Of a stretch of 64,000 bases of DNA, positions 2,998 to 45,033 are shown piece by piece. The notes under the pieces were generated by a model. It did no database searches, was not told where the DNA came from, and worked only from the letters and a program-made list of their open reading frames with translations. Each line of letters opens with the position of its first letter. The stretch's first letter is position 1. The stretch lies in the sequence record LC768500.1. The stretch is one strand, 5' to 3'. Position numbers and translations under genes: made by a program.

Positions 2998-5136
2998 ATG
3001 ACCACACCTACCCAATTACCGATTCCCAGCAATAACTTGCTGGATTCGAGATTTAACTTTGAAAAGCTCGATCAGATTGTTAATAGCGACGCGAACTATT
3101 ACCTTGATCGATTTGGTAAACAACGACTCACCTCGGCCGGATTGGAAGATTTAGCCAGACGATTATCTGAAGATTATGAATCCACCCTATCTAATCAGGA
3201 TGGGTATAAGAAAATGGGGATGGTGTCTGATTTTACTACTCTCAGAACTATCGCCCCAACAATGGAAGGTCAGCGCATTCTACTCAGGTCGGTCGACGCT
3301 GGTTCGAATAATGGATCGGGAGAGTTTATAGGACATTTAGGGAACGGTGGGGTTGACGACGGGGTTAATGTCGCGGTGGGATCCAACTTCTATTGGGAGA
3401 GACTTTCGACTGATTTTGTTAAATCTTCTTCTATAGGTGATTACGCCCGGATTAACTCCTTTATTTCAGCCGGAAATAAGAAGATCACTGTCGATGCCGA
3501 TCTCAGCGGGTGGCTTAACGTCAAAAGTAACACCACGATAACTTTTAACCCATTGTGTCGGCTGATACCTGATACCGATGACAAAGTAGGTATAAGTATT
3601 AGAGGAGCCGCCCCAACCTCCTATGTTAATCTAGCTACTGATGCATTAGGGATAGATGGCTCAATTACCACCACTAATGACGTTTTTAACATTGGCGATT
3701 GGTTGGAAATTAGATCCAACAAAATTCTTCCCGGCGCGAATTTTTATCAGGTTAAGCAATCTGTTTTACGCAAAGTGCTTCGTAAAACACAAAATGGAAA
3801 TGGAACTTGGACATACCGTCTCCACAGTAGTTTAGGTTATAACTTTAACGTCAGCGACGGTGCTTCCGCTGGGGTTGCGACAGTATTGGAAAATATTGTT
3901 ATCGATGGGGCTAACTTAAATAAAGACAATTTCACCAATATCTTCACCATAGGGATAAACTGTTATTACGTTTATAACCTCACTATAAAAAATATCAACC
4001 TATTCGGAACAAAAGTAAAGGATTCTGCCTCAGACACTCCAGGAAGATCCGGAATAAAACTGTATAATTGCGTTAACGTTAGAATCGATAATGTGAACGC
4101 CTCTTATATAGGGTGGTATGGTGTAGAGGTTATGGGATGCAGTGAAAACGTAGATGTAAATCGTTTATACGGCGTGGATTGTCGACATACCGTTTCCATG
4201 AACTGGATCGAATCTGGTGACCTTTATGGCGGACCTATGTGGGTTTCGGTAAGGAACTCAGCAAGTCACGCTGCAAGATTAAGTGGGTTTGACACTCATG
4301 ATCTAGGAAAGGGGATCGCATTTATTAATTGTCAGAGCTTCGATTCCGGCGACGATGGATTCCAAGTAAGGGCGATGGACACCGTTCTAATCGATTGTCA
4401 TGCTGAAGGATCGACACTTGATGGGTTCGGCGGAGCTACTGGCGCAAAGAACAGCAAATTAGTAAACTGTTCTTTCAACTACAACGTCAGATACGGAATT
4501 AACTTAGGTTATGAAGGTGGTATTGTTATCGACTGTGACGTCGATAATAACGGTTACATGGGGATTTGTACCATCGGCGGACTTATCCAAGGAGGCTCGG
4601 TCACCAATAATTATCCGGCTGCTATCGATATAGGTGCCGGATTTAATGCCGCCCAAACCGATCTCAAAATCGATGGTGTTAGAATGCCCTCTTCGACCGC
4701 CCAGACAAAAATTTTGAGTTTTGCTGGTGACGCGGTAGCCGCTAACAACAAACCTGAGCTGGTCAGAATGGAAAATTGTTACGTTCCTGGTTACGGAAGA
4801 GATTGGGCCCGACTGGTATCGTTCACCGTCCAACCTTTACCTCCGGTGCTTAATAATAATCTACTTACTTCCAGCTTAACCTCCCCTGGAAAAATAAGCG
4901 GGCAAGTCCAATTATCTGCAGGGACGGCCACGGTAACAACCACAGAGGTTTTCTCACAACTTGGTAGCGGCGCAAATGTTTTAAAATACTCATCGCAGAT
5001 TAAGTTGAAACCTATCGCTCGTTCTGCCAATATAGGCGCTCATTATGTTTCAGCAATCAACAACGGGACGTCCTTTGTAATCAATTCAACCAATTCCTCG
5101 GATGGCTCGACCATTTATTGGGAAATAACACTTTAA
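2998..5136 (+). CDS. tailspike/depolymerase 1 (beta-helix)
   Basis: Anchor motif PTQxxIPS..FNxEKxD..VNSD..DRFG; parallel beta-helix-like repeats. Confidence 0.85.
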   Translation: MTTPTQLPIPSNNLLDSRFNFEKLDQIVNSDANYYLDRFGKQRLTSAGLEDLARRLSEDYESTLSNQDGYKKMGMVSDFTTLRTIAPTMEGQRILLRSVDAGSNNGSGEFIGHLGNGGVDDGVNVAVGSNFYWERLSTDFVKSSSIGDYARINSFISAGNKKITVDADLSGWLNVKSNTTITFNPLCRLIPDTDDKVGISIRGAAPTSYVNLATDALGIDGSITTTNDVFNIGDWLEIRSNKILPGANFYQVKQSVLRKVLRKTQNGNGTWTYRLHSSLGYNFNVSDGASAGVATVLENIVIDGANLNKDNFTNIFTIGINCYYVYNLTIKNINLFGTKVKDSASDTPGRSGIKLYNCVNVRIDNVNASYIGWYGVEVMGCSENVDVNRLYGVDCRHTVSMNWIESGDLYGGPMWVSVRNSASHAARLSGFDTHDLGKGIAFINCQSFDSGDDGFQVRAMDTVLIDCHAEGSTLDGFGGATGAKNSKLVNCSFNYNVRYGINLGYEGGIVIDCDVDNNGYMGICTIGGLIQGGSVTNNYPAAIDIGAGFNAAQTDLKIDGVRMPSSTAQTKILSFAGDAVAANNKPELVRMENCYVPGYGRDWARLVSFTVQPLPPVLNNNLLTSSLTSPGKISGQVQLSAGTATVTTTEVFSQLGSGANVLKYSSQIKLKPIARSANIGAHYVSAINNGTSFVINSTNSSDGSTIYWEITL

Positions 5137-5193: not shown

Positions 5194-5229
5194 TAAAATC
5201 CAACCGGTCTTAAGACCGGTTGGATTTTA
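5194..5229. repeat. perfect 36 bp loopless palindrome overlapping TATG
   Basis: TAAAATCCAACCGGTCTTAAGACCGGTTGGATTTTA equals its own reverse complement. Confidence 0.85.
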
Positions 5230-5270
5230 TGCTTACCGATATTTCAACCTTCCTGACCCGAGGAATAGCA

Positions 5271-7502
5271 ATGACTTTACCAACGCAAAAACCTATTCCG
5301 AGTTCATCCATAACTGATCAATTATTTAATGCCGAAAAGATAGATCAGGTTGTTAACTCGGATGAACTAGAATATTCCGATCGTTTCGGAAAGAAACGAT
5401 TCACCTTTTCAGGATTATACAACGTTGTGCAGAATTGGATCAGCAGTTTGGGTTCCAGTTCAGGGGCGTCAGCCGTAGGTCTTAGCCAGGGCGGGACGGT
5501 TCAGGCCGGCCTCTATAACGTTGTTAATGTCGAACAATTTGCTTATCTCAATATTTCAGATGATGATTGGGGTCCGGCTTTTAGAGGGGCCAGGGATAAA
5601 GCAATTGAGATATCGGCTCCGGCGGTTACTTTTAAAGGTCACTACAAAATAAAAGTAAGCTCCGGCCCGACCACTCACACCCTGCCTTTCGACGACGGAA
5701 CTTACGATACAAGAAGAACTGGCGAAGTTCTACTTTCTCCAGAAACCTTGAACACAATGCCTGTGGGATTGGAATGGCCTTCCGGACTCTCCCTGAAATC
5801 AGAAGGGATCGGAAACAACTCAATTACTTTTGATTGGGATAATACCACTGTTGGGTTGTCTCAGGGGATTGGGATCTGTATCAGGGTCAGAAACTGGGAC
5901 GGAACTTATCTTGCTAAGGCCGGCTCAGTTAATCGCATGAATAGCGATATAGCCAATGTGGAGTTTGATGGGTTTAGCGTAAATAACGCCTTTATCGGAA
6001 TACTGGCTGATGGTATCGTGGGATCGGTCAGTTGGGGCAGCCTCCAGTTTAAGAAATGTTTCTTACCTATGACTTGGCAGGGCGCCGACAGATGCACGAT
6101 TAAGAAACTGAGATTTACAGATTGTCCGACTGGATTCTCGGTAGGTGGATGGTGGTTGACCCGTAACGACATCTCAGGATCCAATACCGGGCTGGGGGTT
6201 CCGCCTTATGTTGCTGGAACCGACGTGTACTGCATCGGCTGGATGGACTTCGTTAAAATTGAATCTCTGGAGTATTCTAATAGTACTTCGTTTGACAATT
6301 CCCCGTTGTTTGCCGCGGTAGATACTTTCTTCGACACCTATTTCTACAAAAGCGCGAACAGCGCTAGAACTGCTAGTGGTGGTCGATGCACTAATACAGG
6401 TCCTAACCTAACTAGCGCGAGTACGTTAGCGGCAGATTCTCCGTTCTTAGGTATCGCCGGGCGTGCTCACTCACAAATGGGGCGTTACCACCGAAATCAC
6501 ATCTTGAATGAAATTATTTCTCTCAAGACCTGGGGATGTTTCAGGGCATCGGTCCTTACCACGGCTAATGGAAACTCGGAGCTCAATGTCCCGGGGTGCA
6601 TAGTGGGTACCGCGTACATCGAACAGGCCTGTAAGGTCACGGTTGGCGGTGACGCCACGGTGGGGGGAAGTAATGACTTCGTTACATCAGGTAAAGATGT
6701 TTGGAAAGGGACAAAAACTTATTCTAAGTATTATGCTGGTGAAGGATCCGTAATCGTTAAAGATGGATGGTCTGTTAATAGTTTGGGTTTGTTCCCGTCG
6801 GCGCGGACTGTTGCAAGAAACGATAACGGGTATAATAACAGACTAAGAAGGACAATTGTCGACGATGGTACAGGGAAACCGGTCATACTCGAACAGCTTT
6901 CTGAAACGGTCTATGCGACCCCTCCTCAGAAATTTATTCCCAACGCCGTCGGTTCAGTGGACGATAAGTATTACTGGGTTCAGTTTGAGAAGAACGTTTC
7001 TTCAAAGGCCGCTCTTTATTCTGGTGTTCCGACAACGGCTGCGCAAACACCTATAACAGCTCCGGCGATTAAAGTAATAATGGAACGCCTAGGTAACCGA
7101 GTTAAATTAAAAATTAATTTGGATGCGTCAAATTATGCAGCTGGCGGCAGTAATCCGGTGGTAATCGGATTTACTGGGATTTATAAGCCCATTATTGCTA
7201 CGAGTTCCGATTATGCCCTCGGCGCATACGGCCCGGTGAGACCCATAATGGTCAGCACCAAAACATTTACGGTTACTGATTCTACTTCAGTGAGCCGGAC
7301 GTTTAGGATCGAGCCGGTAGCGCATCAAGCTGGGGTGTTCACTGATGGCGCCGGGGTTAATAACTACTACTTTGTTTTGCTCACCCAGCATCATACTTCT
7401 GACACTAATAGACTGTTGTGGTCGGATTTCACCGGTTCGTTATGTCAGATAGAAATAGAATATGATACGAATGACACTATCACTTCATCCAGCGTATTTT
7501 AA
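5271..7502 (+). CDS. tailspike/depolymerase 2
   Basis: Start moved to ATG 5271 (GAGGA SD; MTLPTQKPIPSS anchor); 743 aa. Confidence 0.85.
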   Translation: MTLPTQKPIPSSSITDQLFNAEKIDQVVNSDELEYSDRFGKKRFTFSGLYNVVQNWISSLGSSSGASAVGLSQGGTVQAGLYNVVNVEQFAYLNISDDDWGPAFRGARDKAIEISAPAVTFKGHYKIKVSSGPTTHTLPFDDGTYDTRRTGEVLLSPETLNTMPVGLEWPSGLSLKSEGIGNNSITFDWDNTTVGLSQGIGICIRVRNWDGTYLAKAGSVNRMNSDIANVEFDGFSVNNAFIGILADGIVGSVSWGSLQFKKCFLPMTWQGADRCTIKKLRFTDCPTGFSVGGWWLTRNDISGSNTGLGVPPYVAGTDVYCIGWMDFVKIESLEYSNSTSFDNSPLFAAVDTFFDTYFYKSANSARTASGGRCTNTGPNLTSASTLAADSPFLGIAGRAHSQMGRYHRNHILNEIISLKTWGCFRASVLTTANGNSELNVPGCIVGTAYIEQACKVTVGGDATVGGSNDFVTSGKDVWKGTKTYSKYYAGEGSVIVKDGWSVNSLGLFPSARTVARNDNGYNNRLRRTIVDDGTGKPVILEQLSETVYATPPQKFIPNAVGSVDDKYYWVQFEKNVSSKAALYSGVPTTAAQTPITAPAIKVIMERLGNRVKLKINLDASNYAAGGSNPVVIGFTGIYKPIIATSSDYALGAYGPVRPIMVSTKTFTVTDSTSVSRTFRIEPVAHQAGVFTDGAGVNNYYFVLLTQHHTSDTNRLLWSDFTGSLCQIEIEYDTNDTITSSSVF

Positions 7503-7517
7503 CATTTAAGGTGTGAT

Positions 7518-9704
7518 ATGACACTCCCAACACAAAACGCCGTTCCTAGTTCAGCTAAGAACGACCAGCTCTTTAATGCTGAGAAGATAGACCAGGTCGT
7601 TAATAGCGACGACCTCCAATATACTGACCGTTTCGGTAAGAAGCGATTTACTTTTACCGGGCTTTACAATATCATCCAGAATTGGATGGGTGGCATTAGT
7701 GGGCTCACCGGAGCAAACAACGTAGGGACGTTATCTGGTCTGTCCGTTCAGTCCGAATTGATTGGAGTACAGTCGGTAGAAGCTTTGCGATCACTTGAAC
7801 CGACTTATACGGATCAGAGAGTAAAGGTTTTGAGATCATCCCCCACCGGGGTTATTTTGAATCACGACGTTTACTATGATTCATCCGATAAAACTTCATC
7901 GGATAACGGATACTCGGTCTTTGTTACTCCCAATGGGAATAGGTGGAAGACCGATATTACCAACGGGTATAACCCATTATTTTTAATAGGGCAGGAAGGG
8001 TACACTGACATATCGTCTGCGATTAACAAAATCGCCTATGATCTGGCGGTACGGTGGGGTAATAATAAAGGCGTAATAGACTTCTGCACCACTATAAGGA
8101 TTCCGGGTAAGTTATTTGGTCAAACACGATATAACGTGACCGGACCTATCCATATCCCGTCGTTCGTTTCCCTAAGCATGGACGTTGACACATACTTTGA
8201 TTACTATACCGTGACTAACACAGACGGGATTATTATCGATAATAGTTATTTCCCGATGCTGTTAGACTCGGCGTACGATCCGTCTACTGCAGCCAGACCA
8301 AGATCAGTCCTATTATGGGAAGCGTCCAGAGAAGTCTTTATTGGCGGGAGACTCATCTTAACCCACCCTATAGGGTCGTCAAGAACATCTAATACCGGAA
8401 TAACGATAGGGAATACCGCTAGCGGATTCATAGATGTCAGAGGGTGTAATTTAAACAATTTTGAATGTTTTGGATTTTATTTCGGGATAAAAATAAATCC
8501 AATTGATGTTTATATCAACTCATTCTCCCGATTCCATTTAGGCCGCAACTATAACGCTGTTGCGGTTTTAGGAGATACAAAGACTAACGCCGGGGAAAAA
8601 TTTAATTTCAGTAACGCCACGATCTCCGATTCAGATTCCGACTTAATTTACATTGAGAATAACGGATTTGAATTGTTCTTTTCTGACGTGTCCTTAGACT
8701 ATCCAACAGGTGATCTAGTAAAAATCACCAAACTCGGTAATGCTTACGTCTCTTTCAATCAGTGCCATATTGAAGGCGTCCAGGGCATGTTAGTGAATGT
8801 AACAGGTTCTACTCTTTTTCCAAAATACGGAAAGAGAATCGTATTTTCGAATTGCATGATTGATATTTCTTCAGGGCAAAGTACCTGGAACAGAACTTGG
8901 TTCTTCTCCTCAACCATCAATACTTTCGTAATGGTGGATAAAACAACCAGGTTCTGGCCATCGACCGCTACGCTCAATTCGAGTAAAACCGCGTATCATT
9001 CTCTTATTAATAACGGTTCTCCAGCAAATAACGCCATTACTTTAGATTACCAATTATCAGACGAAGACCTTATTGACGCATCTACCTTTGTCCTGGGTCA
9101 GTTTAAGCCGGTAGGTGTCAACAAGAGGGTTATAAGTACCAATTCTTATTCCGGTACCGTCGGGAACGCCTACACTGGAGGGAGTTCTTCCACTGATTCT
9201 TGGGGTTGGTATATAGTCAACGGATCGTGGACTTATGCTTCAGCCGATGCATCCGATGGCGATGGTTTGCAGGCGATTTCTTTAACCTCGGACGATGCGA
9301 CTAAAAGCTTTTTCGTAATGTGTTCGCTACCGTGGAACACATTACCTCAAGAGAAATTTAGAGCGCTGGGCGCCATTAAGGTGTATAGCGGGTATACCGG
9401 CTCGGTAAACGTTTCTTGTCTAGTCGAGGCTCATAGTTTGCTGACAATGAACAGTACAGCAGTGGCCGATAATGTGATAGCGACTACTTACAGTCCGGCG
9501 GTAGATGTAGCGGCATTGGCCGCTGCGAATTCCAGGGTCGGTATGTTCCAAGGTTTCTGCACGCAAGCGGCCCAGGTTAACTCATATAGTAATTCTACTC
9601 ACCCGTTACAATTTGTTAGAGTAGGGTTTAAAATAACTGGATTCACTGGAACGATTGAATTGAAGTTACCGACGGTAACCAGTCATAGACTGCTGACAGC
9701 TTAA
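7518..9704 (+). CDS. tailspike/depolymerase 3
   Basis: Same anchor; beta-helix-like core. Confidence 0.85.
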   Translation: MTLPTQNAVPSSAKNDQLFNAEKIDQVVNSDDLQYTDRFGKKRFTFTGLYNIIQNWMGGISGLTGANNVGTLSGLSVQSELIGVQSVEALRSLEPTYTDQRVKVLRSSPTGVILNHDVYYDSSDKTSSDNGYSVFVTPNGNRWKTDITNGYNPLFLIGQEGYTDISSAINKIAYDLAVRWGNNKGVIDFCTTIRIPGKLFGQTRYNVTGPIHIPSFVSLSMDVDTYFDYYTVTNTDGIIIDNSYFPMLLDSAYDPSTAARPRSVLLWEASREVFIGGRLILTHPIGSSRTSNTGITIGNTASGFIDVRGCNLNNFECFGFYFGIKINPIDVYINSFSRFHLGRNYNAVAVLGDTKTNAGEKFNFSNATISDSDSDLIYIENNGFELFFSDVSLDYPTGDLVKITKLGNAYVSFNQCHIEGVQGMLVNVTGSTLFPKYGKRIVFSNCMIDISSGQSTWNRTWFFSSTINTFVMVDKTTRFWPSTATLNSSKTAYHSLINNGSPANNAITLDYQLSDEDLIDASTFVLGQFKPVGVNKRVISTNSYSGTVGNAYTGGSSSTDSWGWYIVNGSWTYASADASDGDGLQAISLTSDDATKSFFVMCSLPWNTLPQEKFRALGAIKVYSGYTGSVNVSCLVEAHSLLTMNSTAVADNVIATTYSPAVDVAALAAANSRVGMFQGFCTQAAQVNSYSNSTHPLQFVRVGFKITGFTGTIELKLPTVTSHRLLTA

Positions 9705-9765
9705 TCGGCCGCTGGTAGATCGTTTCTTATTCTGGTTAGCCGGCGTCTTCTTCCGTTTACTAGGT

Positions 9766-9789
9766 TATCGGGCTTTTAAAGGCCCGATA
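9766..9789 (+). terminator. hairpin after tailspike 3
   Basis: TATCGGGC/GCCCGATA stem. Confidence 0.55.
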
Positions 9790-9855
9790 GTTATAATTGA
9801 TGGACGGGTGTAGCGACCGAATCTCTTTAGTCATTTTGGTATTTCAATCATTAAT

Positions 9856-9886
9856 CTAACACCCCGTGTTCAACACGGGGTGTTAG
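9856..9886. promoter_or_regulatory. 15 bp-arm palindrome overlapping the SD of tailspike 4
   Basis: CTAACACCCCGTGTT-C-AACACGGGGTGTTAG runs into AGGAG. Confidence 0.5.
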
Positions 9887-9896
9887 GAGTCTTTCA

Positions 9897-12169
9897 ATGA
9901 CACAGCCAACTAAGAATCCTATTCCCAGTGGGAATATATTAGATCAAATTTTTAACGGGGAAAAGATCGACGAGGTGGTGAACAGCGATAATGAGCAATA
10001 CTCAGACCGTTTCGGTATTAAACGTTTCACAGTAACGGGACTTGCGAAGTTAGTTAAAGATCTTATTGCATCTATCTCCGGTGTGGGTGGCGCGGCTAAC
10101 GTAGGATTGGCTCAGGGAGGAAATATCCAACAGGCGATATCTTATATCACGCCTGAAATGTCAGGAATCGTCACCGGTGTCGGAAATGCGGATGACGACA
10201 CGTCAGCAATACAATGGGCTTTTAATCAAAACCTCCCCATCGTCTTTAACCCTAAAAAGGTTTACCACATAAATCCTGGGGTTATCACTCACGTCGGTGC
10301 TGTAGATGTCAAGGCCTCCACCGCTACCTTTGTTTCTGACGGTCCTGCTTTTGAGATCATAGATTGCGACGGTAGTCAATGGGACGGGGGTATTTTTGTT
10401 TCGCAAACTATTCCGTGGACCGTTGTGTACGATGCCGGGTTCAATGTGATAGAGTCCGGAAGATTGGGGTATGGTAGGATGCCTTATCAGGACAGCGGGG
10501 TCGATCCGAATTTTCTATATCAAAAAATAGCCTGCTCTTTAATTTTTAGATCGTCTGATCAGTCTGTGAAAGACGGACTTCTGGTTAAAAATATTAAAGG
10601 GAGTTACGCTAATATAGTCTGCGCTGGCTTTAAAAATACGGTTTTTGACAATTTAGAGATTAGAGGGGGGCTTTAGGGGCAGCTCTTCTTATCCTTAATG
10701 ATTGCGAACAACCGGTTCTTTCTGGTTTTGGGTGGAATGCGGGGGCGGATACAAGTAAAGGTAATAGTTTTAAATGGGGTAGAGGAACTAATCACATTAT
10801 TAAGAATTCGAAGTTTTTCGAATCCAGACAAATGGGTCTGGCCATTATGGGGTCGGATAATATAATATTATCCGATATTTGGACTTATGACAACGCCGAA
10901 TCCGGAATACAGACCGGTCAATATTCGGCAGCCTACCCCCAAGAATCAATAATTTCCAAACACATAACCCAAAAAGGATGTCTGTCGTGGGGCAACTATT
11001 ACGACGGGTTTGACCACGCCACCGTCACGTCTGGTGCCAACGGTCCTTATTTTGAAAAACACCTGAACATGATTGGTAACCAGGCGTTCAATAATAGAGC
11101 TACTGGGATGGTGGTCCAAGGAAACTTTTTACAAATTAATAATAATGAGTTCTCTGTTAACGGAACACACGGGGTTTCTATAAGAGATTCATCGGTTATA
11201 GATGTTTCCGACAATATCATGTACAAGAACGGAGCGATTTCCGGTGGGTATGGGTTGGTAGTTGTCGGGACCGATAGTTTGATTAAAGACAATACCATTA
11301 TTAACGACGAAACACTTGCAAACTCACATATTGTTAATATTTCCGTGGGTAATCAAGCAAGAAAAATTTTCGATGTTAAATTTATTACCTCCCTAATTTC
11401 AGTTCGTTCTTCCCCTACAATGGTTATTGGAAATGGTGTCGATATATCGTACACCAAAACAACTTCTAATGGAGCGGTTACATCCAGCGGTACAAAATCA
11501 AGTTTGGTTAAAGGGGATTTTGTCGCAGGAAAAACTAACAGTGAGTTTTACGATGATGAGTTTGGCGCTGTTCAGGCTTGGAAGCACCCTTATACCGGGT
11601 CGTATTTAAGATTAGGTCCCCTGGATACAGGCAGAACGACTAACGGGCCTTTTACAATAAGTTACAATAGGGGTAAAAACACAACTGCTCCTACTGGATA
11701 TTCTGATAACACAGGGATAGGGTCCACCGAATTAATATTTAATCCCACGTCGTTTATGCTGAATATCTATGCAGCCAATAGCCCGATAACCCCAGTCGTG
11801 GGTTACTCATTTAATACGACTAGTGTAAGACCAACGATTACCAATTTTGCTACTTTAGGAGAAAACAATTACCGGTTCAAAACTCTATATTTAAACTCCT
11901 TCGTTATTTCAGACTCAGGAATAATCCCTGAACAAACAAATATCGTTGATTTGGGTTCGGGCACAAAACGGATAAGAACAGGTTATTTTAACGCCCTCGA
12001 TCTTAGCACTTCGCCTAAAATAGGGAGTGGTGAAGCGGCGGTTATTGTTCAGCCTCCCGCGACTTCAACTTCGAATGGGACGAAGGGGCAGATTGCTTAT
12101 GATACCTCCTATATTTATTTGTGTGTTTCGGCCAATACCTGGATGAGATCACCATTATCATCTTGGTAA
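9897..12169 (+). pseudogene. tailspike 4 split by a 1-nt frameshift in a G6 run (phase-variable, pseudogene or sequencing indel)
   Basis: ORF 9897..10676 ends ...IRGGL-TAG; the frame of 10832..12169 is open from 10664; one extra G at 10665-10670 gives a single 757 aa ORF. Confidence 0.85.
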
Positions 12170-12178
12170 TAACATAAT

Positions 12179-12213
12179 TCGATATCTCGACGGATAATCC
12201 GTCGAGATATCGA
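12179..12213. repeat. 16 bp-arm palindrome followed by TATG
   Basis: TCGATATCTCGACGGA-TAA-TCCGTCGAGATATCGA. Confidence 0.8.
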
Positions 12214-12287
12214 TAATTTTATGCTGATCTAAATTCAGTAGACTTGCGCAAGTCTTTTATACTACATTCTTTTAAAGGAGTAACCTC

Positions 12288-14846
12288 GTGGCTACAACTC
12301 CAACTACGGGTGACATCCCCAGCAATGCTGCGGTGGACCTCAAGTTTAACTCGGAACAATTCGACCGAGTAATGAATTCTGACGATCTGACTTATACGGA
12401 TCGTTTTGGTAAAAAACGCATTACAATGAAAGGGGTTCAGGAACTCGCTAATGGCTTCCAGGATACTTTCACCAATCTGTTGGGTTCTCCCGACGGGTTT
12501 AAACTGATCGGCGGAGTAAAGTCTTTTGACACCCTGAGATCAACCCCAGTGAAAACCGAAGGTCAGCGTATTTTCCTCAAGTCTTACTATCAAGATGGAG
12601 TCGACGGCGGTGGGCTCTTCATAGGACACATCGGAACCAAGTTAGATGACTCCGGAACCGTTGCCCAGGGAGTTAACTACTACTGGGAGCGAGTTCTAGG
12701 CGGAATTACACCCACGGTAGAGATGTTCGGTTGCCCTAACAGCACGACTGTTGACGCCGGCCCTTATATCACTTTAGCGCTAGGAGTTGTTGGCGAAGTA
12801 CGTTTACAGGATAGAACGTATTACGTGGACTCGGCGGATATTCCATCGGGCAGCAGGATTGTTTCTTTGGGTGGGGCTGTGATAAGGCCGTTAACCTCCA
12901 ATGCTTCTGCTAAATTTAACCTAGGTTCTGGAAGAGAAAAAATAAGATTTGAGAATATTAAATTCTCTGATCCGGCCGGCCTCGTTACCAGTGAAGACGC
13001 CCTTTTAATAAATGCCGAAAGCATCACCGGATTGACTATTACCAATTGCACCTTTGAAGGTTTAAAGCAGCGTTGTGTTAGAGTTAGAAATGGTTCCGGG
13101 ATAAAAATTACCGATAACAAATTCAGAGGAAGTCTCCCGCATTCTCAATTAAGCGATGAAAGATCCGCTGAGATTTATCTGGTTGACACCCTAGCACACG
13201 TGATCGTCTCTAATAATCAGTTCTATGGGACCGACAGTGGGTTATGGGGGTCTAGAGAAATTGGGGTGTTTGTTCACGCGGTTACGTCAGGGGCGTATTG
13301 GAATGACGTGCATATCGTGTCCAACTACTTCGAAAACTATCGTCGGTTTGGTATAGGCGTGGGAACTCAGGATATAGGAACCCTAGACCAGTTATCAAAA
13401 AATGTATGGATTACCGAAAATACAATTATTAACTCCGGCCAAGAAGGGATCAAAATGAAAGCCGGGTCGATAGTCCATGTTGATAACAACACTGTCGACG
13501 GATTTGAAGGAATAATGGCTGAGGTGCCGGATTCCTTGAACGGCGGAATTTTCATGCAAATTAACGCCGAGTCTACTTGTAACGGCAACCGTATTTATGG
13601 GAAAAATAAGAAGTTATGGTCCGGTGCCGTAACTTCGGCCACTGGTACAACAGTTTCTCTTCCCACAAGTAACTGGACGACATATACGATATCAGCAACC
13701 CAAGGTAGCGGAGTCAGTACCATTGCCGGCAAGTATGTTTATATAAGTTCAGGAACTGGAGTGGGTCAGTGGCGCCGGATTTCTAGCTGGAACAGCACGA
13801 CCAATATGGCTACCGTCAACACCGCATGGACGACCGTTCCGGATACGACCAGCGTGATAGAAGTTTATAGCAACCCCTCCATGGGCATAAAGTATCGCGG
13901 GAATAACACGGGTGGGTCCACCTGGGCCGATAGTAGAACCGCAAGATGCTTCCAAAGCATGAACAACTATGTGGAAGGCTGCGAGGTGGGATTTGGGTTA
14001 TCCGAACCCCTTTTCAATTGCCAATTCGGCTCACTTCATGCCCAGAACTGTAGAGCGATACTAAAAACTTATTCTGGAACGCTGAAAACAACCCGCGGGA
14101 TTCAGTTCTTTGGACTGACGGGCCAGTATCTTGACTACCCGTCCACTGACAACTCATCCGCCATAACCTTTACAGACTGTAGCCAAATCGAAATACATGG
14201 CTTAAAAATTTCTGGAAGTTATTACGATGGGTTGAGGTTATCAAATGTCGACAACTTTAAAATTTTCGGCGGTGTTGTGGAAGGATGCGGGATGGGGGTC
14301 AGCGGTCGTTACGGCCTGGCTATTGCTGGTGGTGTGACTAACTTCGAATCACACGGTGTGACCTACGGCGGGGCCAATGCGGGAGCTGGACAAAGCTACG
14401 CCGCATTTTTCCAGAATACTAATAGCGGAATATCCTTCTTCGGCGGCAGTATGCTGGGTAACGTTGCGGGAGTGTTTAACCCAGGGTCGTCTGGAGCTCT
14501 GTATCCTCCAAGAGATACTGTCTTTAGCGGGGTAGCTGGGGCGGGTCAGATTAAGGGCGTGACTCTCGTAGATAATGCGTCCAAAGTAATTGTCCCCGGT
14601 ACTGATAAAGACACTGTTTTATTTAATACCGCGCTGACCGCGATTAGAACAGTAACTTTCTCCACAGCCTTTGTTGAAGATGGTTGCGTGTACACCATCT
14701 GTAGATCGGCCGCCGCCACGGGGAGTTTTGCTCTCAACGTAGTGACCGCGGTAGGAACACAAGCCCTCGCAGCAGGCTCCTACCTAAGAGTTATTTACTC
14801 GAGTACGCTAGGTTGGATTCCTGTTTCCTACGGTTTATTGAGTTAA
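12288..14846 (+). CDS. tailspike/depolymerase 5
   Basis: GTG start after AAGGAG; anchor; second domain (EGQRI..FIGH..YWER) shared with tailspike 1. Confidence 0.85.
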   Translation: MATTPTTGDIPSNAAVDLKFNSEQFDRVMNSDDLTYTDRFGKKRITMKGVQELANGFQDTFTNLLGSPDGFKLIGGVKSFDTLRSTPVKTEGQRIFLKSYYQDGVDGGGLFIGHIGTKLDDSGTVAQGVNYYWERVLGGITPTVEMFGCPNSTTVDAGPYITLALGVVGEVRLQDRTYYVDSADIPSGSRIVSLGGAVIRPLTSNASAKFNLGSGREKIRFENIKFSDPAGLVTSEDALLINAESITGLTITNCTFEGLKQRCVRVRNGSGIKITDNKFRGSLPHSQLSDERSAEIYLVDTLAHVIVSNNQFYGTDSGLWGSREIGVFVHAVTSGAYWNDVHIVSNYFENYRRFGIGVGTQDIGTLDQLSKNVWITENTIINSGQEGIKMKAGSIVHVDNNTVDGFEGIMAEVPDSLNGGIFMQINAESTCNGNRIYGKNKKLWSGAVTSATGTTVSLPTSNWTTYTISATQGSGVSTIAGKYVYISSGTGVGQWRRISSWNSTTNMATVNTAWTTVPDTTSVIEVYSNPSMGIKYRGNNTGGSTWADSRTARCFQSMNNYVEGCEVGFGLSEPLFNCQFGSLHAQNCRAILKTYSGTLKTTRGIQFFGLTGQYLDYPSTDNSSAITFTDCSQIEIHGLKISGSYYDGLRLSNVDNFKIFGGVVEGCGMGVSGRYGLAIAGGVTNFESHGVTYGGANAGAGQSYAAFFQNTNSGISFFGGSMLGNVAGVFNPGSSGALYPPRDTVFSGVAGAGQIKGVTLVDNASKVIVPGTDKDTVLFNTALTAIRTVTFSTAFVEDGCVYTICRSAAATGSFALNVVTAVGTQALAAGSYLRVIYSSTLGWIPVSYGLLS

Positions 14847-14854
14847 TTAATCCA

Positions 14855-14878
14855 AGAGGGAGATTTAGATCTCCCTCT
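14855..14878. terminator. hairpin between tailspikes 5 and 6
   Basis: AGAGGGAGAT-TTAG-ATCTCCCTCT. Confidence 0.5.
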
Positions 14879-14894
14879 ACCTAAAAGGTGAGTT

Positions 14895-16412
14895 ATGACT
14901 ACCCCAACTAATAACAATATACCGAGTAACTCGGTTCAAGACCGATTATTCAACGCAGAAAAATTTGACGAGTTTATCAACTCTAACAACACGTCTTTTA
15001 CAGACCGTCTTGGGATCAGCAGAACGACGTTAAACGGGATTAGACAAAACGTTTCTAATTGGATGACGTCGTTTTCCACTGAAAACGGGGCGGAGAATGT
15101 CGGATATAGAACCTCTAATGTGGGAGATGTTCTTTCCCGTATGAGGACAATGAGTGACTCGGGTCTTCCGCGTCCTTATCTGGGGTATTCTTCGACTAAC
15201 GACCTTGCTATTTTTACAGAGCAGGGCGCTCTTCGCGATACCGATCTTCTTTTGAATGGTTCGATCACCATAGGTAGGAAATTCCGTAGTATTCGCAGGC
15301 ACGCGACCGCATTGAGTTTACGAGGTGGCCGAGCTTCATCAGGAGATACTGGAGTCTTCAATGCTCAGGTTACGGGTGCGCAGAACGCCAGGGGCGTAGC
15401 TGCATATGGGTTGAATGATGGCGTAACATTATTTGCCGACGCCTTAGCTCCAGCACTGGAAGACTGGGAAACAGTTGATACTGCGTCATATACCGCCACG
15501 ACTGTTACGGTCAGCCCATCGGTGTATTCTTCTTTCCTGACCAACGCCCTAGTTGGTGACGTCATTCAGACACTCCACCCCACTAAATGTTGGGGGTTGA
15601 TTACCAGTATAAACAAAACCACTGGTGTGGTGACAGTTGATGAATGGGCGACAGCTGATGGGGCCACTCTAACACCGACTTCGGGCGTGGGGTTCAACGT
15701 CAACCTGATTAATAAAGTTTGGGCTATCAACGCCAACACTATCATTAACAGCAACTCTGCCGCCGATAATGCCGTAATATGCGAATTTGGGGCGGTGATC
15801 AATAAGTCTGGAGCTTCGCTAAACGGTATCGATATTCCGCTGCTCCAACAAAGCCTCTATGATGGTGTGGCTGGCGTACTGGTTCGCCCTGCGAGCACTT
15901 CAGCTAAAACATGGTTGTACGGTGTCCGTTCAACTAATAACAGAATGAACTTCTATGCGTCCGGCGCCACGTATAATAACTACGTATCGACCGGGTCTGC
16001 GCCAGTCGGAATAAGATTTTCTGGAATGCCCACTTATTCGATGGTGTTCAGCAAATCTTCCGATATGACAGATATGTCGTATGTTAACTCGACGATGATT
16101 TACGATGGATACGGTAGACGTCTGCGCAATATGACTAAGTACAGTGTGCTTACGACGAATACAACGCTGAATGCGCTCATTCCTTGTTATCTGATAAATG
16201 CAGCCGGGATAACTCTGACAATGCCGGCTATAAGTAATATGTCTTCAGGTCATTTTTACGAATTGAAGATACTTAGGGCTGGAACATACTATATCACCGC
16301 CAACGCCCAGGAAGTCAACGTAAGTGGTTACGCTACGTACCCTTTAACTGTCACCACCCCAACTAAAGTAGAGGTTTGGTACGATGGATCGACCTGGATA
16401 ATTGTTCCTTAA
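14895..16412 (+). CDS. tail fibre/tailspike 6
   Basis: Same anchor; beta-rich C-terminal tip ending YDGSTWIIVP. Confidence 0.8.
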   Translation: MTTPTNNNIPSNSVQDRLFNAEKFDEFINSNNTSFTDRLGISRTTLNGIRQNVSNWMTSFSTENGAENVGYRTSNVGDVLSRMRTMSDSGLPRPYLGYSSTNDLAIFTEQGALRDTDLLLNGSITIGRKFRSIRRHATALSLRGGRASSGDTGVFNAQVTGAQNARGVAAYGLNDGVTLFADALAPALEDWETVDTASYTATTVTVSPSVYSSFLTNALVGDVIQTLHPTKCWGLITSINKTTGVVTVDEWATADGATLTPTSGVGFNVNLINKVWAINANTIINSNSAADNAVICEFGAVINKSGASLNGIDIPLLQQSLYDGVAGVLVRPASTSAKTWLYGVRSTNNRMNFYASGATYNNYVSTGSAPVGIRFSGMPTYSMVFSKSSDMTDMSYVNSTMIYDGYGRRLRNMTKYSVLTTNTTLNALIPCYLINAAGITLTMPAISNMSSGHFYELKILRAGTYYITANAQEVNVSGYATYPLTVTTPTKVEVWYDGSTWIIVP

Positions 16413-16457
16413 CGATTTAACCAATATATGGACCATAAACCCATCTAGGGAAATATC

Positions 16458-16739
16458 ATGTCAGCCGAAAAACAAATTCTTCAACTTCAAGCTCAAATTT
16501 GCCACCTGCGTTTAGAAGGCGCCGAAGCCAAACGATACATCGCCGAGCTCGAATCGATTATCGCTAATAACGAATTGCAGCGTGTATCTATCGAGTTGGG
16601 TCGTATCGAGAAAGCCGAAGGTATGGAGAAAGATACCGCTCGGCAAGAAGAAGACGAGGCGGTGAACAAAGACATCGAAGATATCAAACGCGCAGAACGG
16701 GCTTCAGAAGAAACTCAGGCAGAAGAAGAACAGCAGTAA
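16458..16739 (+). CDS. small coiled-coil protein, possible tail-fibre assembly chaperone
   Basis: Heptad- and acid-rich; directly follows the array. Confidence 0.55.
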   Translation: MSAEKQILQLQAQICHLRLEGAEAKRYIAELESIIANNELQRVSIELGRIEKAEGMEKDTARQEEDEAVNKDIEDIKRAERASEETQAEEEQQ

Positions 16740-17120
16740 ATCCTTATAGTCAGTAGAATTGGGGGTATTTTTTAACTAACGTACCGTAGAGTTTGCCTCC
16801 AGAGCGTACGCTAAATTGGTTAATGTGAAGGTCCGATCTTTTGATTACACTGCCGATATGGGGTTCATTACTCAAGGCTGTAATTTTACAACCGTTACTA
16901 AGTGGGGTTTCCCTCAATTCGGGTCATTTGGTTTGGGTGAGAGGACTCAGCGAATGGATGCGATGGGCGCCGGCGCGGTAGCGGAATACATCAACACAGT
17001 TAATCAGGGTGTGTCGTTCAAAGCTTTAACAACTTACTCCGGGACATAATTCTAGTTATTTTCTACCCAGCCCTAATGCTATGAAGGTAAGGAGTTAACC
17101 CACACACAGCAGGTACTTAT

Positions 17121-17894
17121 ATGCATAATCGTAGTGTTAAGCGTGCTAACCGCGACGCTCGTCGCGAAGCAAGACGTCAAGATAAGTCCCAAAGTAGCCA
17201 ACTGAAACTGGTGGACAACAATTTCAGTGAAATAAATCTACCTCTTGCAAAAGCTGATCGGAGTAAGATTGAGCCGAAAACCCCAATGCAACAAAAATAT
17301 TGGAATGGGTTACACGCCCACGATGTCGTCATCGGTATTGGTGAAGCGGGTAGCGGTAAAACGTTCCTCCCGACTTGTTACGCTGCAGAACGTCTGCTGG
17401 CTAAAGACGTGGAAAAGATTATCGTTACACGACCAGTCCTACAGGCCGATGAAGATCTGGGTTTTCTCCCCGGGGATGTTAATGAGAAATTCGCACCTTA
17501 CTTCCGACCGGTCTACGATATCTTACTGAAACGCCTGGGTGGTGGAATGCTCAACTATTGCATGAAGCCTGGCGTGGAGAAAGTTGAAGTCGCCCCCTTT
17601 GCTTTTATGAGAGGTCGTACTTTTTCTGACTCAGTGGTGATTCTTGACGAAGCGCAAAACGTTACAGTTATGCAGATGAAAATGTTCATCACTCGTATGG
17701 GTGAGAACACTACGGTAATCATCAACGGCGACCTTACCCAGTGCGATCTTCCTAAAGGAGTTAAATCCGGTCTGGAAGATCTACTGGAGCGCATTGAACG
17801 AGATCCTGAAAATGGATTCCCGATTTATCGTTTCAATGCGGCTGATAGTGTGCGGTCAGATATTTGCTCCAAAGCCCTGAAACTTTATAAGTAA
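17121..17894 (+). CDS. phoH: PhoH family ATPase
   Basis: GEAGSGKT Walker A, LGFLPGD..EK, APFAFMRGRTF, ILDEAQN. Confidence 0.95.
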   Translation: MHNRSVKRANRDARREARRQDKSQSSQLKLVDNNFSEINLPLAKADRSKIEPKTPMQQKYWNGLHAHDVVIGIGEAGSGKTFLPTCYAAERLLAKDVEKIIVTRPVLQADEDLGFLPGDVNEKFAPYFRPVYDILLKRLGGGMLNYCMKPGVEKVEVAPFAFMRGRTFSDSVVILDEAQNVTVMQMKMFITRMGENTTVIINGDLTQCDLPKGVKSGLEDLLERIERDPENGFPIYRFNAADSVRSDICSKALKLYK

Positions 17895-17899
17895 ATTCT

Positions 17900-19486: not shown

Positions 19487-21295
19487 TTACGCTAATACCC
19501 AGCAAGCTCTAGATGAGTTCCAAATGAATTCATAGGTTCCCGCAGAAGTTAAAGCGACGCTAGTTAACGACCCACCTCCAGGGCCGTAAATTGTATCGGT
19601 CCCGTTAGGGGTTACCGTGTACGTCCCACCTGATAGGATTTTCTTAAATCTTATCATAAACCCTGAACTCAACCCAGTCCCAGACGGAAGGTTGAAAGAT
19701 GAGGCGGCGGAACTCAAACAGTAATAAACGTTACTCAATCCGGTCGTAGGGAAAGTATAACCGGTATTAATTTCAGTATAAGTAACGGATACTTGAGATA
19801 ATCCAGCTAATGAGACTTTACCTGCCGCGAACGTGATTAACTGGGTAGGCGCCGCAGTTCCTGAACCACCCCAGATTCCAGAAGGAGAGAAACTCAATCT
19901 TGGGTAAGCCTCACCCGTCACTTTTAACGAATACATTGCTGTAGCCGTGGACGTAGCTCCCTGTTGAATAGGCTGAACGGCATCCATGACTTTTATGTTA
20001 GCGAATTCGTAGTTTCCTCTGTCAGGGGAATTGGTAATCGCCACCGCGGCGGCGTCAGATGGGGACCCGGTAGCGACGTTATTGGTGAAGTAATCATTAA
20101 CGCCATTCCACATTGTCGAAGAACCTGACGCGAAAGCCATGCAATAAGCTACTCGTGTGCTAGACGTGCCAGTGTTGTAATTGAAATGGGAGTTGGAGGT
20201 AATAATCTTTCTCACGTTACCTGTGAACTTCAGGTTGGCGTAACCATTAGTGGCGATCTCCGCAGCTGCAGACCCCCATCCGTTGGCAAAGAACGTGTTG
20301 GCGATTTGTTCGTGGATTTCAGTACCGCCAGGAGTGTTAAATAAAATCCCTGACTTAGCGTTAGAGTTAACGTGGTTCCTCACCATGCTCGTTACGGTAG
20401 CATTAGGTCCGAATACCACGCCGTTTCCGTTAGACTCGTAAGATTCACTGAGTACCATACGGAAACTTGCACAGTTAGCGTAAATATTATCCGATCCACT
20501 ACGCCCGATAGAAGAAGATAACAATTGCCAATCCGCGCCATTGGCGATATACAAGCAGGTGTTGTAACAGTATAGTATCGAAGAGTATTGCAGATACCCC
20601 ATGTTACGGTTTTTCCCAGCGTAAACGCCGTACCCAGAGAAATTACCAATACCTGAGTTTATCAACTGTACACCGATTGAATAAACACTGGCATCGGCTA
20701 GATATATCGCCGTGAGAGGTCCGCTCGTCGGCGCGTTTAGAGCATAAACCGACCCTGGGTTAGACCAATCCCCCTCAATCCTAATATTTTCAAAAGTAGG
20801 GGAAGCCGACCGGGAACAGTAGAACATGTTACCGGTCGTCCCTGGTTTGGCGGTAATACGAGCTGAACTACGTTTACCAACACCTTCAAAATAAACGTTA
20901 CTGGAAATATTTAAATTCCCAATTATGTAGTTCTTACCCGCGCTAAGTTTTATTCTAGCTGTAGAGGAAGCGTTAATAGCGGCCTGCATGGCTGCTGTAT
21001 CATCAGTTACACCATCGCCCTTTGCCCCATAAGCTTCTGGAACAACGTAGGTCAAGTAATCCTGAACGTGTCCCCCTTGGCTAACGCCGATGTTACCAGC
21101 GCCAGTATTCCCAGTTAGGTTAGAGAAGAAGGTTTGGATAGAGGTTACGATCCCCTTCATTGTGAAACGCTTGGCTCCAAAACGATCGTCGTATGTCTCG
21201 TTATCACTATTAACGATCTCGTCGAGTTTCTCGGTGTTAAACCTCACGTCTATTGCAGTACTACTGGGTATATTATTTTGTGTTGGAGTTGTCAT
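19487..21295 (-). CDS. tailspike/depolymerase 7 (pectate-lyase-like beta-helix), inverted
   Basis: Same anchor; YGAKGDGVTDDTAAMQAAIN motif. Confidence 0.88.
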   Translation of the reverse strand: MTTPTQNNIPSSTAIDVRFNTEKLDEIVNSDNETYDDRFGAKRFTMKGIVTSIQTFFSNLTGNTGAGNIGVSQGGHVQDYLTYVVPEAYGAKGDGVTDDTAAMQAAINASSTARIKLSAGKNYIIGNLNISSNVYFEGVGKRSSARITAKPGTTGNMFYCSRSASPTFENIRIEGDWSNPGSVYALNAPTSGPLTAIYLADASVYSIGVQLINSGIGNFSGYGVYAGKNRNMGYLQYSSILYCYNTCLYIANGADWQLLSSSIGRSGSDNIYANCASFRMVLSESYESNGNGVVFGPNATVTSMVRNHVNSNAKSGILFNTPGGTEIHEQIANTFFANGWGSAAAEIATNGYANLKFTGNVRKIITSNSHFNYNTGTSSTRVAYCMAFASGSSTMWNGVNDYFTNNVATGSPSDAAAVAITNSPDRGNYEFANIKVMDAVQPIQQGATSTATAMYSLKVTGEAYPRLSFSPSGIWGGSGTAAPTQLITFAAGKVSLAGLSQVSVTYTEINTGYTFPTTGLSNVYYCLSSAASSFNLPSGTGLSSGFMIRFKKILSGGTYTVTPNGTDTIYGPGGGSLTSVALTSAGTYEFIWNSSRACWVLA

Positions 21296-44960: not shown

Positions 44961-45033
44961 GTTGTAAATATTTACAGCCCTGTACTATTGTAATGGTCAA
45001 CCGACCGTAAACTTTAATTAAAGGAAAGAAATT

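What the first reader, a model, noticed from the sequence alone, without database searches (positions are those of the whole stretch)
9897..12169. Tailspike 4 switched off by a 1-nt slip in a poly-G tract: possible phase-variable receptor-binding protein
Seen: the upstream frame stops at TAG 10674. The downstream frame has a stop at 10661 but is open from 10664 to 12169, so the shift must lie in 10664-10673, which contains G6 (10665-10670). G7 restores IRGGALGAALLILNDCEQ.. and a 757 aa protein, in the size range of its siblings (505-852 aa). Both halves remain free of other stops. The OFF product (259 aa) keeps the virion anchor and could still occupy a baseplate site. Known: poly-G phase variation of RBPs occurs in Campylobacter phages. 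Inference: a reversible host-range switch, a -1 ribosomal frameshift, or recent inactivation after passage on a single host.
Basis: partly seen in the sequence, partly recalled or inferred. Interest (0 to 1): 0.75.

Follow-up and report, generated by a model that had tools for sequence, protein, structure and literature searches.

The report
Recently broken tailspike gene in Klebsiella phage
One of seven capsule-degrading tailspike genes of the Klebsiella jumbo phage phiKp_32 carries a single, very recent frameshift in a short run of G's; this looks like an ordinary replication-slippage knockout, not an evolved on/off switch.

Summary
The window is Klebsiella phage phiKp_32 (LC768500.1). Gene 9897-12169 is one tailspike-depolymerase gene cut by one frameshift in a G run, and the record annotates it as two hypothetical proteins. 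Four natural intact 757-aa alleles exist on six metagenome contigs, 95-97.5% identical in DNA. Each differs in length from the window gene by exactly one alignment column. An independent Logan assembly of DDBJ run DRR406566 reproduces the broken version at 100% identity over 12.7 kb, and the genome is not riddled with homopolymer errors, so an assembler error is unlikely. The part after the shift shows no decay (one synonymous private change in 495 codons), so the break is very recent.

The evolved phase-variation reading is not supported. In three of the four intact alleles the run is interrupted by the same synonymous base. Five distant homologues have runs of only 2-4 bases there. G/C runs are not enriched in the spike genes. 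A programmed frameshift is not supported either: there is no canonical slippery heptamer, no downstream structure and no Rfam match, and every relative reads the gene in one frame.

Best reading: a slipped-strand loss of a dispensable spike. It may revert at the ordinary repeat-slippage rate, as described for short repeats in other phages.

The parts
9897..12169 (+). Tailspike (capsule depolymerase type) gene, broken by one frameshift. The public record annotates it as two hypothetical CDSs. Natural intact orthologues are 757 aa.
   Evidence: ORFs and annotation; one CDS in distant homologues; intact 757-aa orthologues, one gap column each; Pfam Beta_helix, 34.5 bits against a cut-off of 25.9; fold matches to 9NA, P22, Det7 and CBA120 tailspikes, E about 1e-8
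9897..10076 (+). Codes the N-terminal virion-anchor module (about 60 residues), shared by all seven spike genes of the window.
   Evidence: 7-way alignment, 20 invariant columns in the first ~70 residues; PDB 9occ_G 'putative tail protein gp13', residues 3-61, E 2.8e-12; 7 places in the record match the N-terminus
10134..11335 (+). Codes the right-handed beta-helix core (orthologue residues ~80-480). The frameshift lies inside this domain.
   Evidence: AlphaFold model of orthologue P0001: strand-rich, with most 10-residue blocks between residues ~80 and ~470 above pLDDT 75; Foldseek tailspike and beta-helix glycanase matches
11336..12166 (+). Codes the C-terminal region (orthologue residues ~481-757). 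It is poorly modelled. The last ~85 residues resemble the C-termini of other Klebsiella phage spikes.
   Evidence: pLDDT mostly below 50; residues 413-497 of the C piece match the tailspike of phage 0507-KN2-1 and others at 43% identity; phrog_21017, phrog_17312
9860..9882 (+). 9-bp inverted repeat (hairpin) between the previous spike gene and this one. An AGGAG ribosome-binding site follows at 9885-9889.
   Evidence: read directly
12179..12213 (+). 16-bp perfect hairpin with a terminator-like tail, directly after the stop of the C-terminal piece. It marks the end of a single transcription unit.
2998..5136 (+). Sibling spike 1 (712 aa), with K1-lyase Rider and C-terminal domains.
5220..7502 (+). 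Sibling spike 2 (the record annotates it from 5271, 743 aa).
7518..9704 (+). Sibling spike 3 (728 aa).
12288..14846 (+). Sibling spike 5 (852 aa, beta-helix).
14895..16412 (+). Sibling spike 6 (505 aa).
19487..21295 (-). Seventh spike gene on the opposite strand (602 aa) with the same N-terminal anchor.
   Evidence: (Pect-lyase_RHGA_epim)

Best explanation
Gene 9897-12169 is one of seven tailspike or capsule-depolymerase genes of the Miamivirus-like jumbo phage phiKp_32. In this isolate it carries one genuine, evolutionarily very recent frameshift, produced by replication slippage in a short G run. That run encodes invariant residues of the beta-helix. It became uninterrupted only in one allele lineage, most parsimoniously through a synonymous substitution, which created a slippage hot spot. 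phiKp_32 then slipped. The result is a null allele. Translation ends inside the beta-helix core, so no complete spike of this specificity can be made. The phage presumably infects through its other six spikes. The loss was most likely neutral on the host used for isolation and propagation, and was fixed by drift or plaque-purification bottlenecks (inference). It may revert at the ordinary repeat-slippage rate, but the tract is not a maintained switch.
For: Shown. (1) There is a single length difference against six intact orthologous contigs, and it lies in the run. (2) The Logan assembly of DRR406566 is 100% identical over 12,729 bp and carries the same split. (3) Both pieces evolved under purifying selection (19-29 synonymous against 4-9 non-synonymous codon differences in the N piece; 18-22 against 3-6 in the C piece for three of the four alleles). 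On the window lineage after the shift there is only 1 synonymous and 0 non-synonymous private change in 495 codons, and no stops. (4) Three of four intact alleles share the same synonymous third-position base that interrupts the run. Distant homologues have runs of 2-4 at the site. The residues the run encodes are invariant in all 11 aligned homologues. (5) The assembly is otherwise clean. In about 199 kb aligned to BUCTxx100 there are only 12 isolated 1-2-base length differences. One cuts a long ORF in phiKp_32, and two cut ORFs in BUCTxx100. Among 137 Miami ORF segments with a match in the window, one genuine frame switch was found. (6) The model and fold search place the shift inside a P22/9NA-type beta-helix. 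Literature: repeats of 6 or more bases in phages mutate at about 3e-4 and revert 1,000-10,000 times faster than point mutations (10.1101/2025.10.21.683753).
Against: The re-assembly uses what are presumably the same reads, so a systematic platform error at G runs is not excluded. The platform of DRR406566 is unknown to me. No read-level tract-length distribution could be examined, so a mixed population is not excluded. Zero decay after the shift is also what a switching or still-selected gene would show. The only other ORF-breaking difference found in phiKp_32 also lies in a G/C run, although A/T runs are about five times as common in the genome. This fits the known higher slippage of G:C runs (my own knowledge), but it would also fit a G/C-specific artefact or a G/C-tract-based variation system. 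Neutral fixation during laboratory propagation is an inference; no propagation history was found.
Confidence: 0.65

Rival explanations
1. Contingency locus: the G run is a hypermutable tract that reversibly turns this spike off and on in a subpopulation. This would be bet-hedging over host capsule types, as in Campylobacter Fletchervirus RBPs.
For: The frameshift is in a homopolymer inside an RBP gene, and the downstream part is undecayed. G/C-run length differences recur in this phage group. Examples are a second gene broken in a G/C run, an intergenic one-base G/C-run difference, and an in-frame 3-base difference in a G run of 9 against 6 in phiKp32_2720. Phage repeats of 6 or more bases behave as contingency loci in T2 and T4. 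Fletchervirus RBPs carry polyG tracts.
Against: The uninterrupted run is absent from three of four intact natural alleles and from all five distant homologues, so it is not maintained by selection. All four natural alleles are in frame with the same gene length. Only 2 of the window's 4 G/C runs of 6 or more lie in the spike block, and the other six spike genes have at most one. Three other runs of 7 sit in intact genes. The run is at or below the lower end of the 7-11 G range reported for Fletchervirus. In coliphages, repeats are under-represented in tail-fibre genes.
Confidence: 0.15
2. Sequencing or consensus artefact: the phage carries the intact gene, and the deposited sequence miscounts the homopolymer.
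For: The break is a single base in a homopolymer, the classic error site. The only other ORF-breaking difference found in this genome is also in a G/C run. The downstream part is perfectly intact.
Against: An independent k-mer assembly (Logan) of run DRR406566 gives the identical sequence, with 0 mismatches and 0 gaps over 12,729 bp. That result is hard to obtain from error-prone long reads (inference). A second assembly also carries the other split gene. None of the roughly 850 A/T runs of 5 or more breaks a gene relative to BUCTxx100. The total of isolated 1-2-base differences is only 12 in about 199 kb, and they are balanced between the two genomes.
Confidence: 0.12
3. Recoding: a programmed -1 ribosomal frameshift, or transcriptional slippage, on the G run makes the full-length spike from the broken gene.
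For: The required shift is -1 and the run allows partial re-pairing of glycine tRNAs. Some low-level spontaneous slippage on such a run is plausible (my own knowledge).
Against: There is no canonical X XXY YYZ heptamer in the upstream frame. The 100 nt downstream are less structured than shuffles (z = +2.08). A wider 161-nt fold is not significant (z = -1.40). There is no Rfam recoding element. No relative uses two frames: five distant and four close alleles are single ORFs. The run is too short for efficient transcriptional slippage (my own knowledge).
Confidence: 0.04
4. A split gene with two working products: an anchor-bearing N-terminal protein and a separately translated C-terminal enzyme.
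For: Both ORFs are annotated. The downstream ORF has an internal ATG, and a promoter-like match lies just downstream of that start.
Against: The split falls inside the beta-helix core, not at a domain boundary. The annotated downstream CDS starts well after the break, so a stretch of the conserved core would be lost. No relative is split. Promoter-like matches are no more frequent than in shuffles (8 against 6.1 +/- 2.4).
Confidence: 0.02

Closest known systems
PolyG-tract phase variation of receptor-binding proteins in Campylobacter Fletchervirus phages (Sorensen et al., Cell Rep 2021, 35:109214; as cited)
   Same: A G homopolymer inside an RBP gene whose length change shifts the reading frame.
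   Different: Those tracts are 7-11 G, are a shared feature of the phage group, and give mixed populations. Here the run is at or below that range. It is missing from three of four close alleles and from all distant homologues. Only one out-of-frame state has been seen.
Phage contingency loci: simple repeats of 6 or more bases in T2, T4 and other phages (Gomez, Barrick and Waters, bioRxiv 10.1101/2025.10.21.683753)
   Same: A slippage-prone homopolymer of 6 or more bases in a phage ORF gives +/-1 frameshifts in non-essential genes. By that paper's broad definition this run qualifies as a 'putative CL'.
   Different: That work measured elevated and reversible mutation in reads and by plating. 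Here only a fixed consensus state is known. The paper also finds such repeats under-represented in tail-fibre genes.
Multi-depolymerase receptor-binding sets of Klebsiella jumbo phages (K64-1, RaK2, FBKp24; PMC6872550, PMC13385381)
   Same: Several beta-helix spikes with a shared N-terminal anchor are encoded side by side. Each is presumably specific for one capsule type. Jumbo phages carry many narrow-specificity RBPs.
   Different: phiKp_32 belongs to the Miami-like group, not to Alcyoneusvirus. One of its seven spikes is broken. The capsule type this spike targets is unknown.
P22 / 9NA / Det7 / CBA120-type tailspikes (PDB 3riq, 8u1o, 2v5i, 5w6f)
   Same: A right-handed parallel beta-helix fold with an N-terminal particle-binding module (E 1e-8 to 1e-6, probability 1.00).
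   Different: Sequence identity is only 10-13% and TM-scores are 0.35-0.48 on a model of mean pLDDT 58. The likeness is at fold level only.
Programmed -1 frameshifting in phage tail genes (lambda G/GT type; from my own knowledge)
   Same: Two overlapping frames in a tail-related gene, with the downstream frame at -1.
   Different: There is no slippery heptamer, no stimulatory structure and no conservation of the two-frame layout.

Membership tests
Phage tailspike / capsule depolymerase (beta-helix RBP) | Right-handed parallel beta-helix domain | tested here: met
   Pfam PF13229 at 34.5 bits against a cut-off of 25.9 on the C piece. The model of the intact orthologue matches tailspike structures at E about 1e-8.
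Phage tailspike / capsule depolymerase (beta-helix RBP) | N-terminal particle-binding (anchor) module shared with other spikes of the same virion | tested here: met
   20 invariant columns across the seven spike N-termini. PDB 9occ_G gp13 residues 3-61 match at E 2.8e-12.
Phage tailspike / capsule depolymerase (beta-helix RBP) | Homologues annotated or used as tail spikes in other phages, located in the RBP gene cluster | tested here: met
   Annotated as tail spike or tail fiber in Indie, BaqKoxi and phi1_066012. The gene lies fourth in a row of six spike genes. It occupies the same slot in contig L010.
Phage tailspike / capsule depolymerase (beta-helix RBP) | Trimeric assembly and polysaccharide-degrading activity on a defined capsule type | not testable with these tools
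   No characterised close homologue was found. There was no PDB sequence hit for the enzymatic part.
Phase-variable / contingency locus | Simple repeat inside the ORF whose length change shifts the frame | tested here: met
Phase-variable / contingency locus | Repeat maintained among relatives (conserved as a tract despite free synonymous sites) | tested here: not met
   The run is interrupted by the same synonymous base in three of four intact alleles. Five distant homologues have runs of 2-4.
Phase-variable / contingency locus | Several tract lengths (ON and OFF) seen among natural isolates or within one population | tested here: inconclusive
   One out-of-frame state (phiKp_32) against four in-frame alleles on six contigs. 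No read-level data were available.
Phase-variable / contingency locus | Measured elevated, reversible switching rate | not testable with these tools
   This needs read-level or population data.
Programmed -1 ribosomal frameshift | Slippery heptamer X XXY YYZ in the upstream frame | tested here: not met
   Read: the first position of the only candidate heptamer does not match.
Programmed -1 ribosomal frameshift | Stimulatory RNA structure a few bases downstream | tested here: not met
   z = +2.08 for the 100 nt downstream. z = -1.40 for 161 nt around the site. No Rfam element.
Programmed -1 ribosomal frameshift | Two-frame layout conserved in relatives | tested here: not met
   All nine related genes are single ORFs.
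Assembly / homopolymer sequencing artefact | Not reproduced by an independent assembly | tested here: not met
   The Logan contig of DRR406566 is identical over 12,729 bp, split included. The reads are presumably the same, so platform error is not excluded.
Assembly / homopolymer sequencing artefact | Many other homopolymer-associated frame breaks across the genome | tested here: not met
   Only one other ORF-breaking difference was found in about 199 kb aligned to BUCTxx100, and among 137 Miami ORF segments with a match in the window. None lies in an A/T run.

The most novel reading that the evidence does not exclude
Miami-like Klebsiella jumbo phages may use slippage at short G/C runs as a general, low-level diversity generator for accessory genes, including individual tailspikes. 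Under this reading a stock is a mixture of virions with different spike repertoires, and phiKp_32 was simply sampled in one state. The recurrent G/C-run length differences in this group are compatible with this reading but do not demonstrate it. They comprise two broken genes, one intergenic site, and one in-frame 9-versus-6 G tract.
Probability: 0.1. Interest if true: 0.55.

Novelty: new member of a known kind. Interest (0 to 1): 0.25.

Why it matters
For annotation, BEH89753.1 and BEH89754.1 in LC768500.1 are two pieces of one tailspike gene and should be flagged as one disrupted gene. For host-range prediction, phiKp_32 should be credited with six complete spikes, not seven. For phage biology, this is a clean natural example of a synonymous change creating a longer homopolymer in an RBP gene, followed by its loss through slippage. 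That fits the recent view that short repeats make phage accessory genes easy to lose and, in principle, to regain. It is not evidence for a dedicated phase-variation system in Klebsiella phages.

Tried and rejected
- Literature searches for phiKp_32 and LC768500 found nothing, so the sequencing platform and passage history are unknown.
- Scans of IMG/VR and JGI metagenome contigs with the intact orthologue found no further loci. The sample of natural alleles therefore stays at four.
- The PDB sequence search with the enzymatic part found nothing. Only the N-terminal anchor hits a solved structure.
The model is only moderately confident (mean pLDDT 58), so I use it for fold class and rough domain bounds only.
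- My first genome-wide indel screen was too noisy: 251 events with a length not divisible by three, mostly in divergent stretches. I replaced it with a strict filter for isolated differences in well-aligned sequence.
- One event that the strict filter flagged as ORF-cutting turned out to be intergenic, with the ORF a spurious antisense one.
- Several antisense-ORF flags in the Miami screen were likewise discarded.
- I considered a G/C-run enrichment in spike genes as a sign of a switch system and rejected it.
- I considered conserved recoding and rejected it.
- The capsule type targeted by this spike could not be assigned; DepoCatalog text was searched without a relevant hit.

Full report
**Identity of the window.**
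The region 9700-12300 matches Klebsiella phage phiKp_32 (LC768500.1, 251,460 bp, sewage, Kurashiki, Japan) at 100% identity. Window base 1 is record base 124001. The phage belongs to the Miami-like jumbo phages. It is 87-95% identical over about two thirds of the next 24 kb to Miami, BUCTxx100, KPN8, YC1 and VB_ZK_P1. The record annotates the two pieces of the finding as separate hypothetical proteins, BEH89753.1 and BEH89754.1. No paper mentions the phage or the accession.

**The observation.**
Two same-strand ORFs in different frames cover 9897-12169, with no further stops in either piece.

**What the gene is.**
- The C piece contains a right-handed beta-helix (Pfam PF13229, 34.5 bits against a cut-off of 25.9).
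- The first ~60 residues are shared with six other genes of the window: 2998-5136, 5220-7502, 7518-9704, 12288-14846, 14895-16412, and 19487-21295 on the minus strand. The alignment has 20 invariant columns. These residues match residues 3-61 of PDB 9occ chain G, 'putative tail protein gp13' (E 2.8e-12).
- A model of the natural intact orthologue P0001 has mean pLDDT 58, but most of residues ~80-470 are confident and strand-rich. It matches the tailspikes of 9NA, P22, Det7, CBA120 and Dettilon at E 1e-8 to 1e-6.
- The gene has its own ribosome-binding site after a 9-bp hairpin. A 16-bp perfect terminator-like hairpin at 12179-12213 follows directly after the C piece. This is the layout of a single gene.
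- The gene is therefore the fourth of six consecutive tailspike or depolymerase genes, with a seventh on the other strand. This is typical of Klebsiella jumbo phages with many narrow-specificity spikes (PMC13385381).

**It is one gene broken once.**
- Five distant homologues carry both halves in one annotated CDS and in the same frame. They share 50-60% aa identity and come from phages Indie, BaqKoxi, Iguana_ER37, phi1_066012 and KP13-16.
- The large protein collection holds a 757-aa protein that is 99% identical to the C piece (P0001).
- Its 90% cluster contains four distinct intact 757-aa alleles (P0001, P0011, P0012, P0013). The only other members are the two phiKp_32 pieces.
- The intact alleles lie on six contigs from JGI and Logan assemblies, L007, L008 and L010-L013. 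On L010 the gene sits in the same slot of a spike cluster that ends at phoH.
- At the DNA level, the window gene is 95.1-97.5% identical to each. It differs by 55-110 substitutions and exactly one gap column. That column falls in the homopolymer run.

**Is it an assembly error?**
- A Logan assembly of DDBJ run DRR406566 (contig L015) equals window 5200-17928, with 0 mismatches and 0 gaps over 12,729 bp. It carries the same split. That this run is the phage's own is an inference from the identity and the DDBJ prefix.
- I screened for other homopolymer damage.
  - Among 137 Miami ORF segments with a match of 70% or better in the window, only one genuine frame switch appeared.
  - Across about 199 kb of phiKp_32 aligned to BUCTxx100, only 12 isolated 1-2-base length differences lie in well-aligned sequence.
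  - One of the 12 cuts a long ORF in phiKp_32, and it is the same gene as in the Miami screen. Two cut ORFs in BUCTxx100. None of the ~850 A/T runs of 5 or more breaks a phiKp_32 gene.
- This is not the profile of an error-prone long-read assembly. A systematic platform error specific to G runs cannot be excluded without the reads.

**Age of the break.**
Differences from the orthologues are mostly synonymous in both pieces, apart from the divergent C-terminal part of one allele. After the shift, the window lineage has 1 synonymous and 0 non-synonymous private changes in 495 codons, and no stops. The break is therefore very recent, or the downstream part is still under selection.

**Is the run a maintained switch?**
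- No. All four intact alleles have the same gene length. In three of them (L010/L011, L012, L013) the run is interrupted by the same synonymous third-codon-position base, which leaves a run three bases shorter. Only the L007/L008 allele has the uninterrupted run.
- The five distant homologues have G/C runs of only 2-4 in the 30 nt around the equivalent site.
- The residues encoded there are invariant in all 11 aligned homologues. The protein motif is constrained and the homopolymer is an accident of codon choice.
- The most parsimonious history is that a synonymous change lengthened the run in one lineage, and phiKp_32 then slipped.
- G/C runs are not enriched in spike genes. The window has four runs of 6 or more (about 10 expected from base composition), and two of them lie in the spike block. 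The other six spike genes have at most one.
- The genome tolerates three runs of 7 in intact genes.

**Recoding.**
The upstream frame has no canonical X XXY YYZ heptamer. The 100 nt downstream of the site fold less well than shuffles (z = +2.08). A 161-nt window is not significant (z = -1.40). Rfam gives only a chance hit at the terminator hairpin. No relative uses two frames.

**Context from the literature.**
- Fletchervirus phages of Campylobacter carry 7-11 G tracts in RBP genes that create phenotypic diversity (Sorensen et al. 2021, cited).
- A 2025 preprint (10.1101/2025.10.21.683753) reports four relevant points.
  - Repeats of 6 or more bases in T2, T4 and other phages mutate at about 3e-4.
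  - They revert 1,000-10,000 times faster than point mutations.
  - They occur in all gene classes.
  - They are under-represented in tail-fibre genes.
- By that broad definition this run is a 'putative contingency locus'. By the stricter criterion of a maintained tract it is not.

**Mechanism.**
Shown:
- The gene carries one frameshift inside the beta-helix core of a tailspike gene.
- Intact orthologues exist.
- The downstream part shows no decay.
- The tract is not conserved.

Inferred:
- The frameshift arose by slipped-strand mispairing.
- No complete spike of this type can be made.
- The truncated product keeps the anchor and roughly the first third of the protein. It ends within the beta-helix, so stable trimer formation is doubtful.
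- The loss was tolerated because the propagation host is recognised by another spike.
- Fixation happened by drift or plaque-purification bottleneck.
- Reversion at the ordinary repeat-slippage rate is possible.

**Verdict.**
The 'phase-variable RBP' headline and the ribosomal-frameshift branch are not. The finding is a useful annotation correction and a tidy example of a known process. It is not a new mechanism.

**Rule compliance.**
No sequence joined across the frameshift was built. The two pieces were always queried apart, and natural intact orthologues were used for alignment and folding. The direct functional test of reversibility is not proposed.

Noticed in passing
window 24904-25471 (+): A second broken gene. 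The homologue of Miami gp105 (YP_010667284.1, 188 aa), which is also intact in YC1 and BUCTxx100, is split into two annotated CDSs (phiKp32_1440/1450) by one frameshift, again inside a G/C homopolymer run. There is one gap column against Miami over 1,035 bp at 97.4% identity. A second assembly (a 20-50 kb contig) carries the same split.
   Followed up: yes
window 44961-45033 (intergenic, between the homologues of Miami gp167 and gp168): A one-base length difference in a G/C run relative to Miami and BUCTxx100. No gene is affected.
   Followed up: yes
L024:10591-10599 (LC768500.1 248090-248098, CDS phiKp32_2720): A run of 9 G inside an intact 164-aa gene. The BUCTxx100 homologue has a run of 6 and is 3 bases shorter, so this is an in-frame tract-length polymorphism. 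It is the most tract-like G run of the genome and lies outside the window.
   Followed up: partly
L022:22702-22711 (LC768500.1 122702-122711): A run of 10 C in an intergenic spacer, also 10 long in BUCTxx100.
   Followed up: partly
window 23036-24172 (+); second copy at L022:19897-21033: Two IS200/IS605-type TnpB genes in the phage genome (annotated tnpB_2 and tnpB_1; Pfam OrfB_IS605 and Cas12f1-like_TNB). BUCTxx100 has a 'mobile element protein' at a different place.
   Followed up: no
window 2998-5136 (+): The first spike carries the K1-lyase Rider and K1-lyase C-terminal domains (PF24149 at 119.7 bits, PF24146 at 77.7 bits). This suggests a K1-capsule lyase-type spike.
   Followed up: no
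window 21409-21684 (+): A small gene with a Tad2-like hit (PF11195), next to the minus-strand spike gene. It could be an anti-defence gene.
   Followed up: no
window about 52638-53240 (+) against Miami gp191/gp192: The reverse case. A 200-aa window ORF matches Miami in two frames, so Miami appears frame-shifted or differently arranged there relative to phiKp_32.
   Followed up: no
window 12215-12300: The junction after the broken gene (spacer plus the start of the next spike) is 98.8% identical in BUCTxx100, KPN8 and VB_ZK_P1, although those phages lack this spike gene. Together with the shared N-termini this looks like a recombination boundary for spike cassette exchange.
   Followed up: partly
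L002 (PQ049254.1) and L025-L029 (OR529409.1): The host labels look odd. 'Acinetobacter phage Indie' is classified as a Drulisvirus with a Klebsiella-type spike. 'Stenotrophomonas phage BUCTxx100' is about 94% identical to Klebsiella phages Miami and phiKp_32.
   Followed up: no
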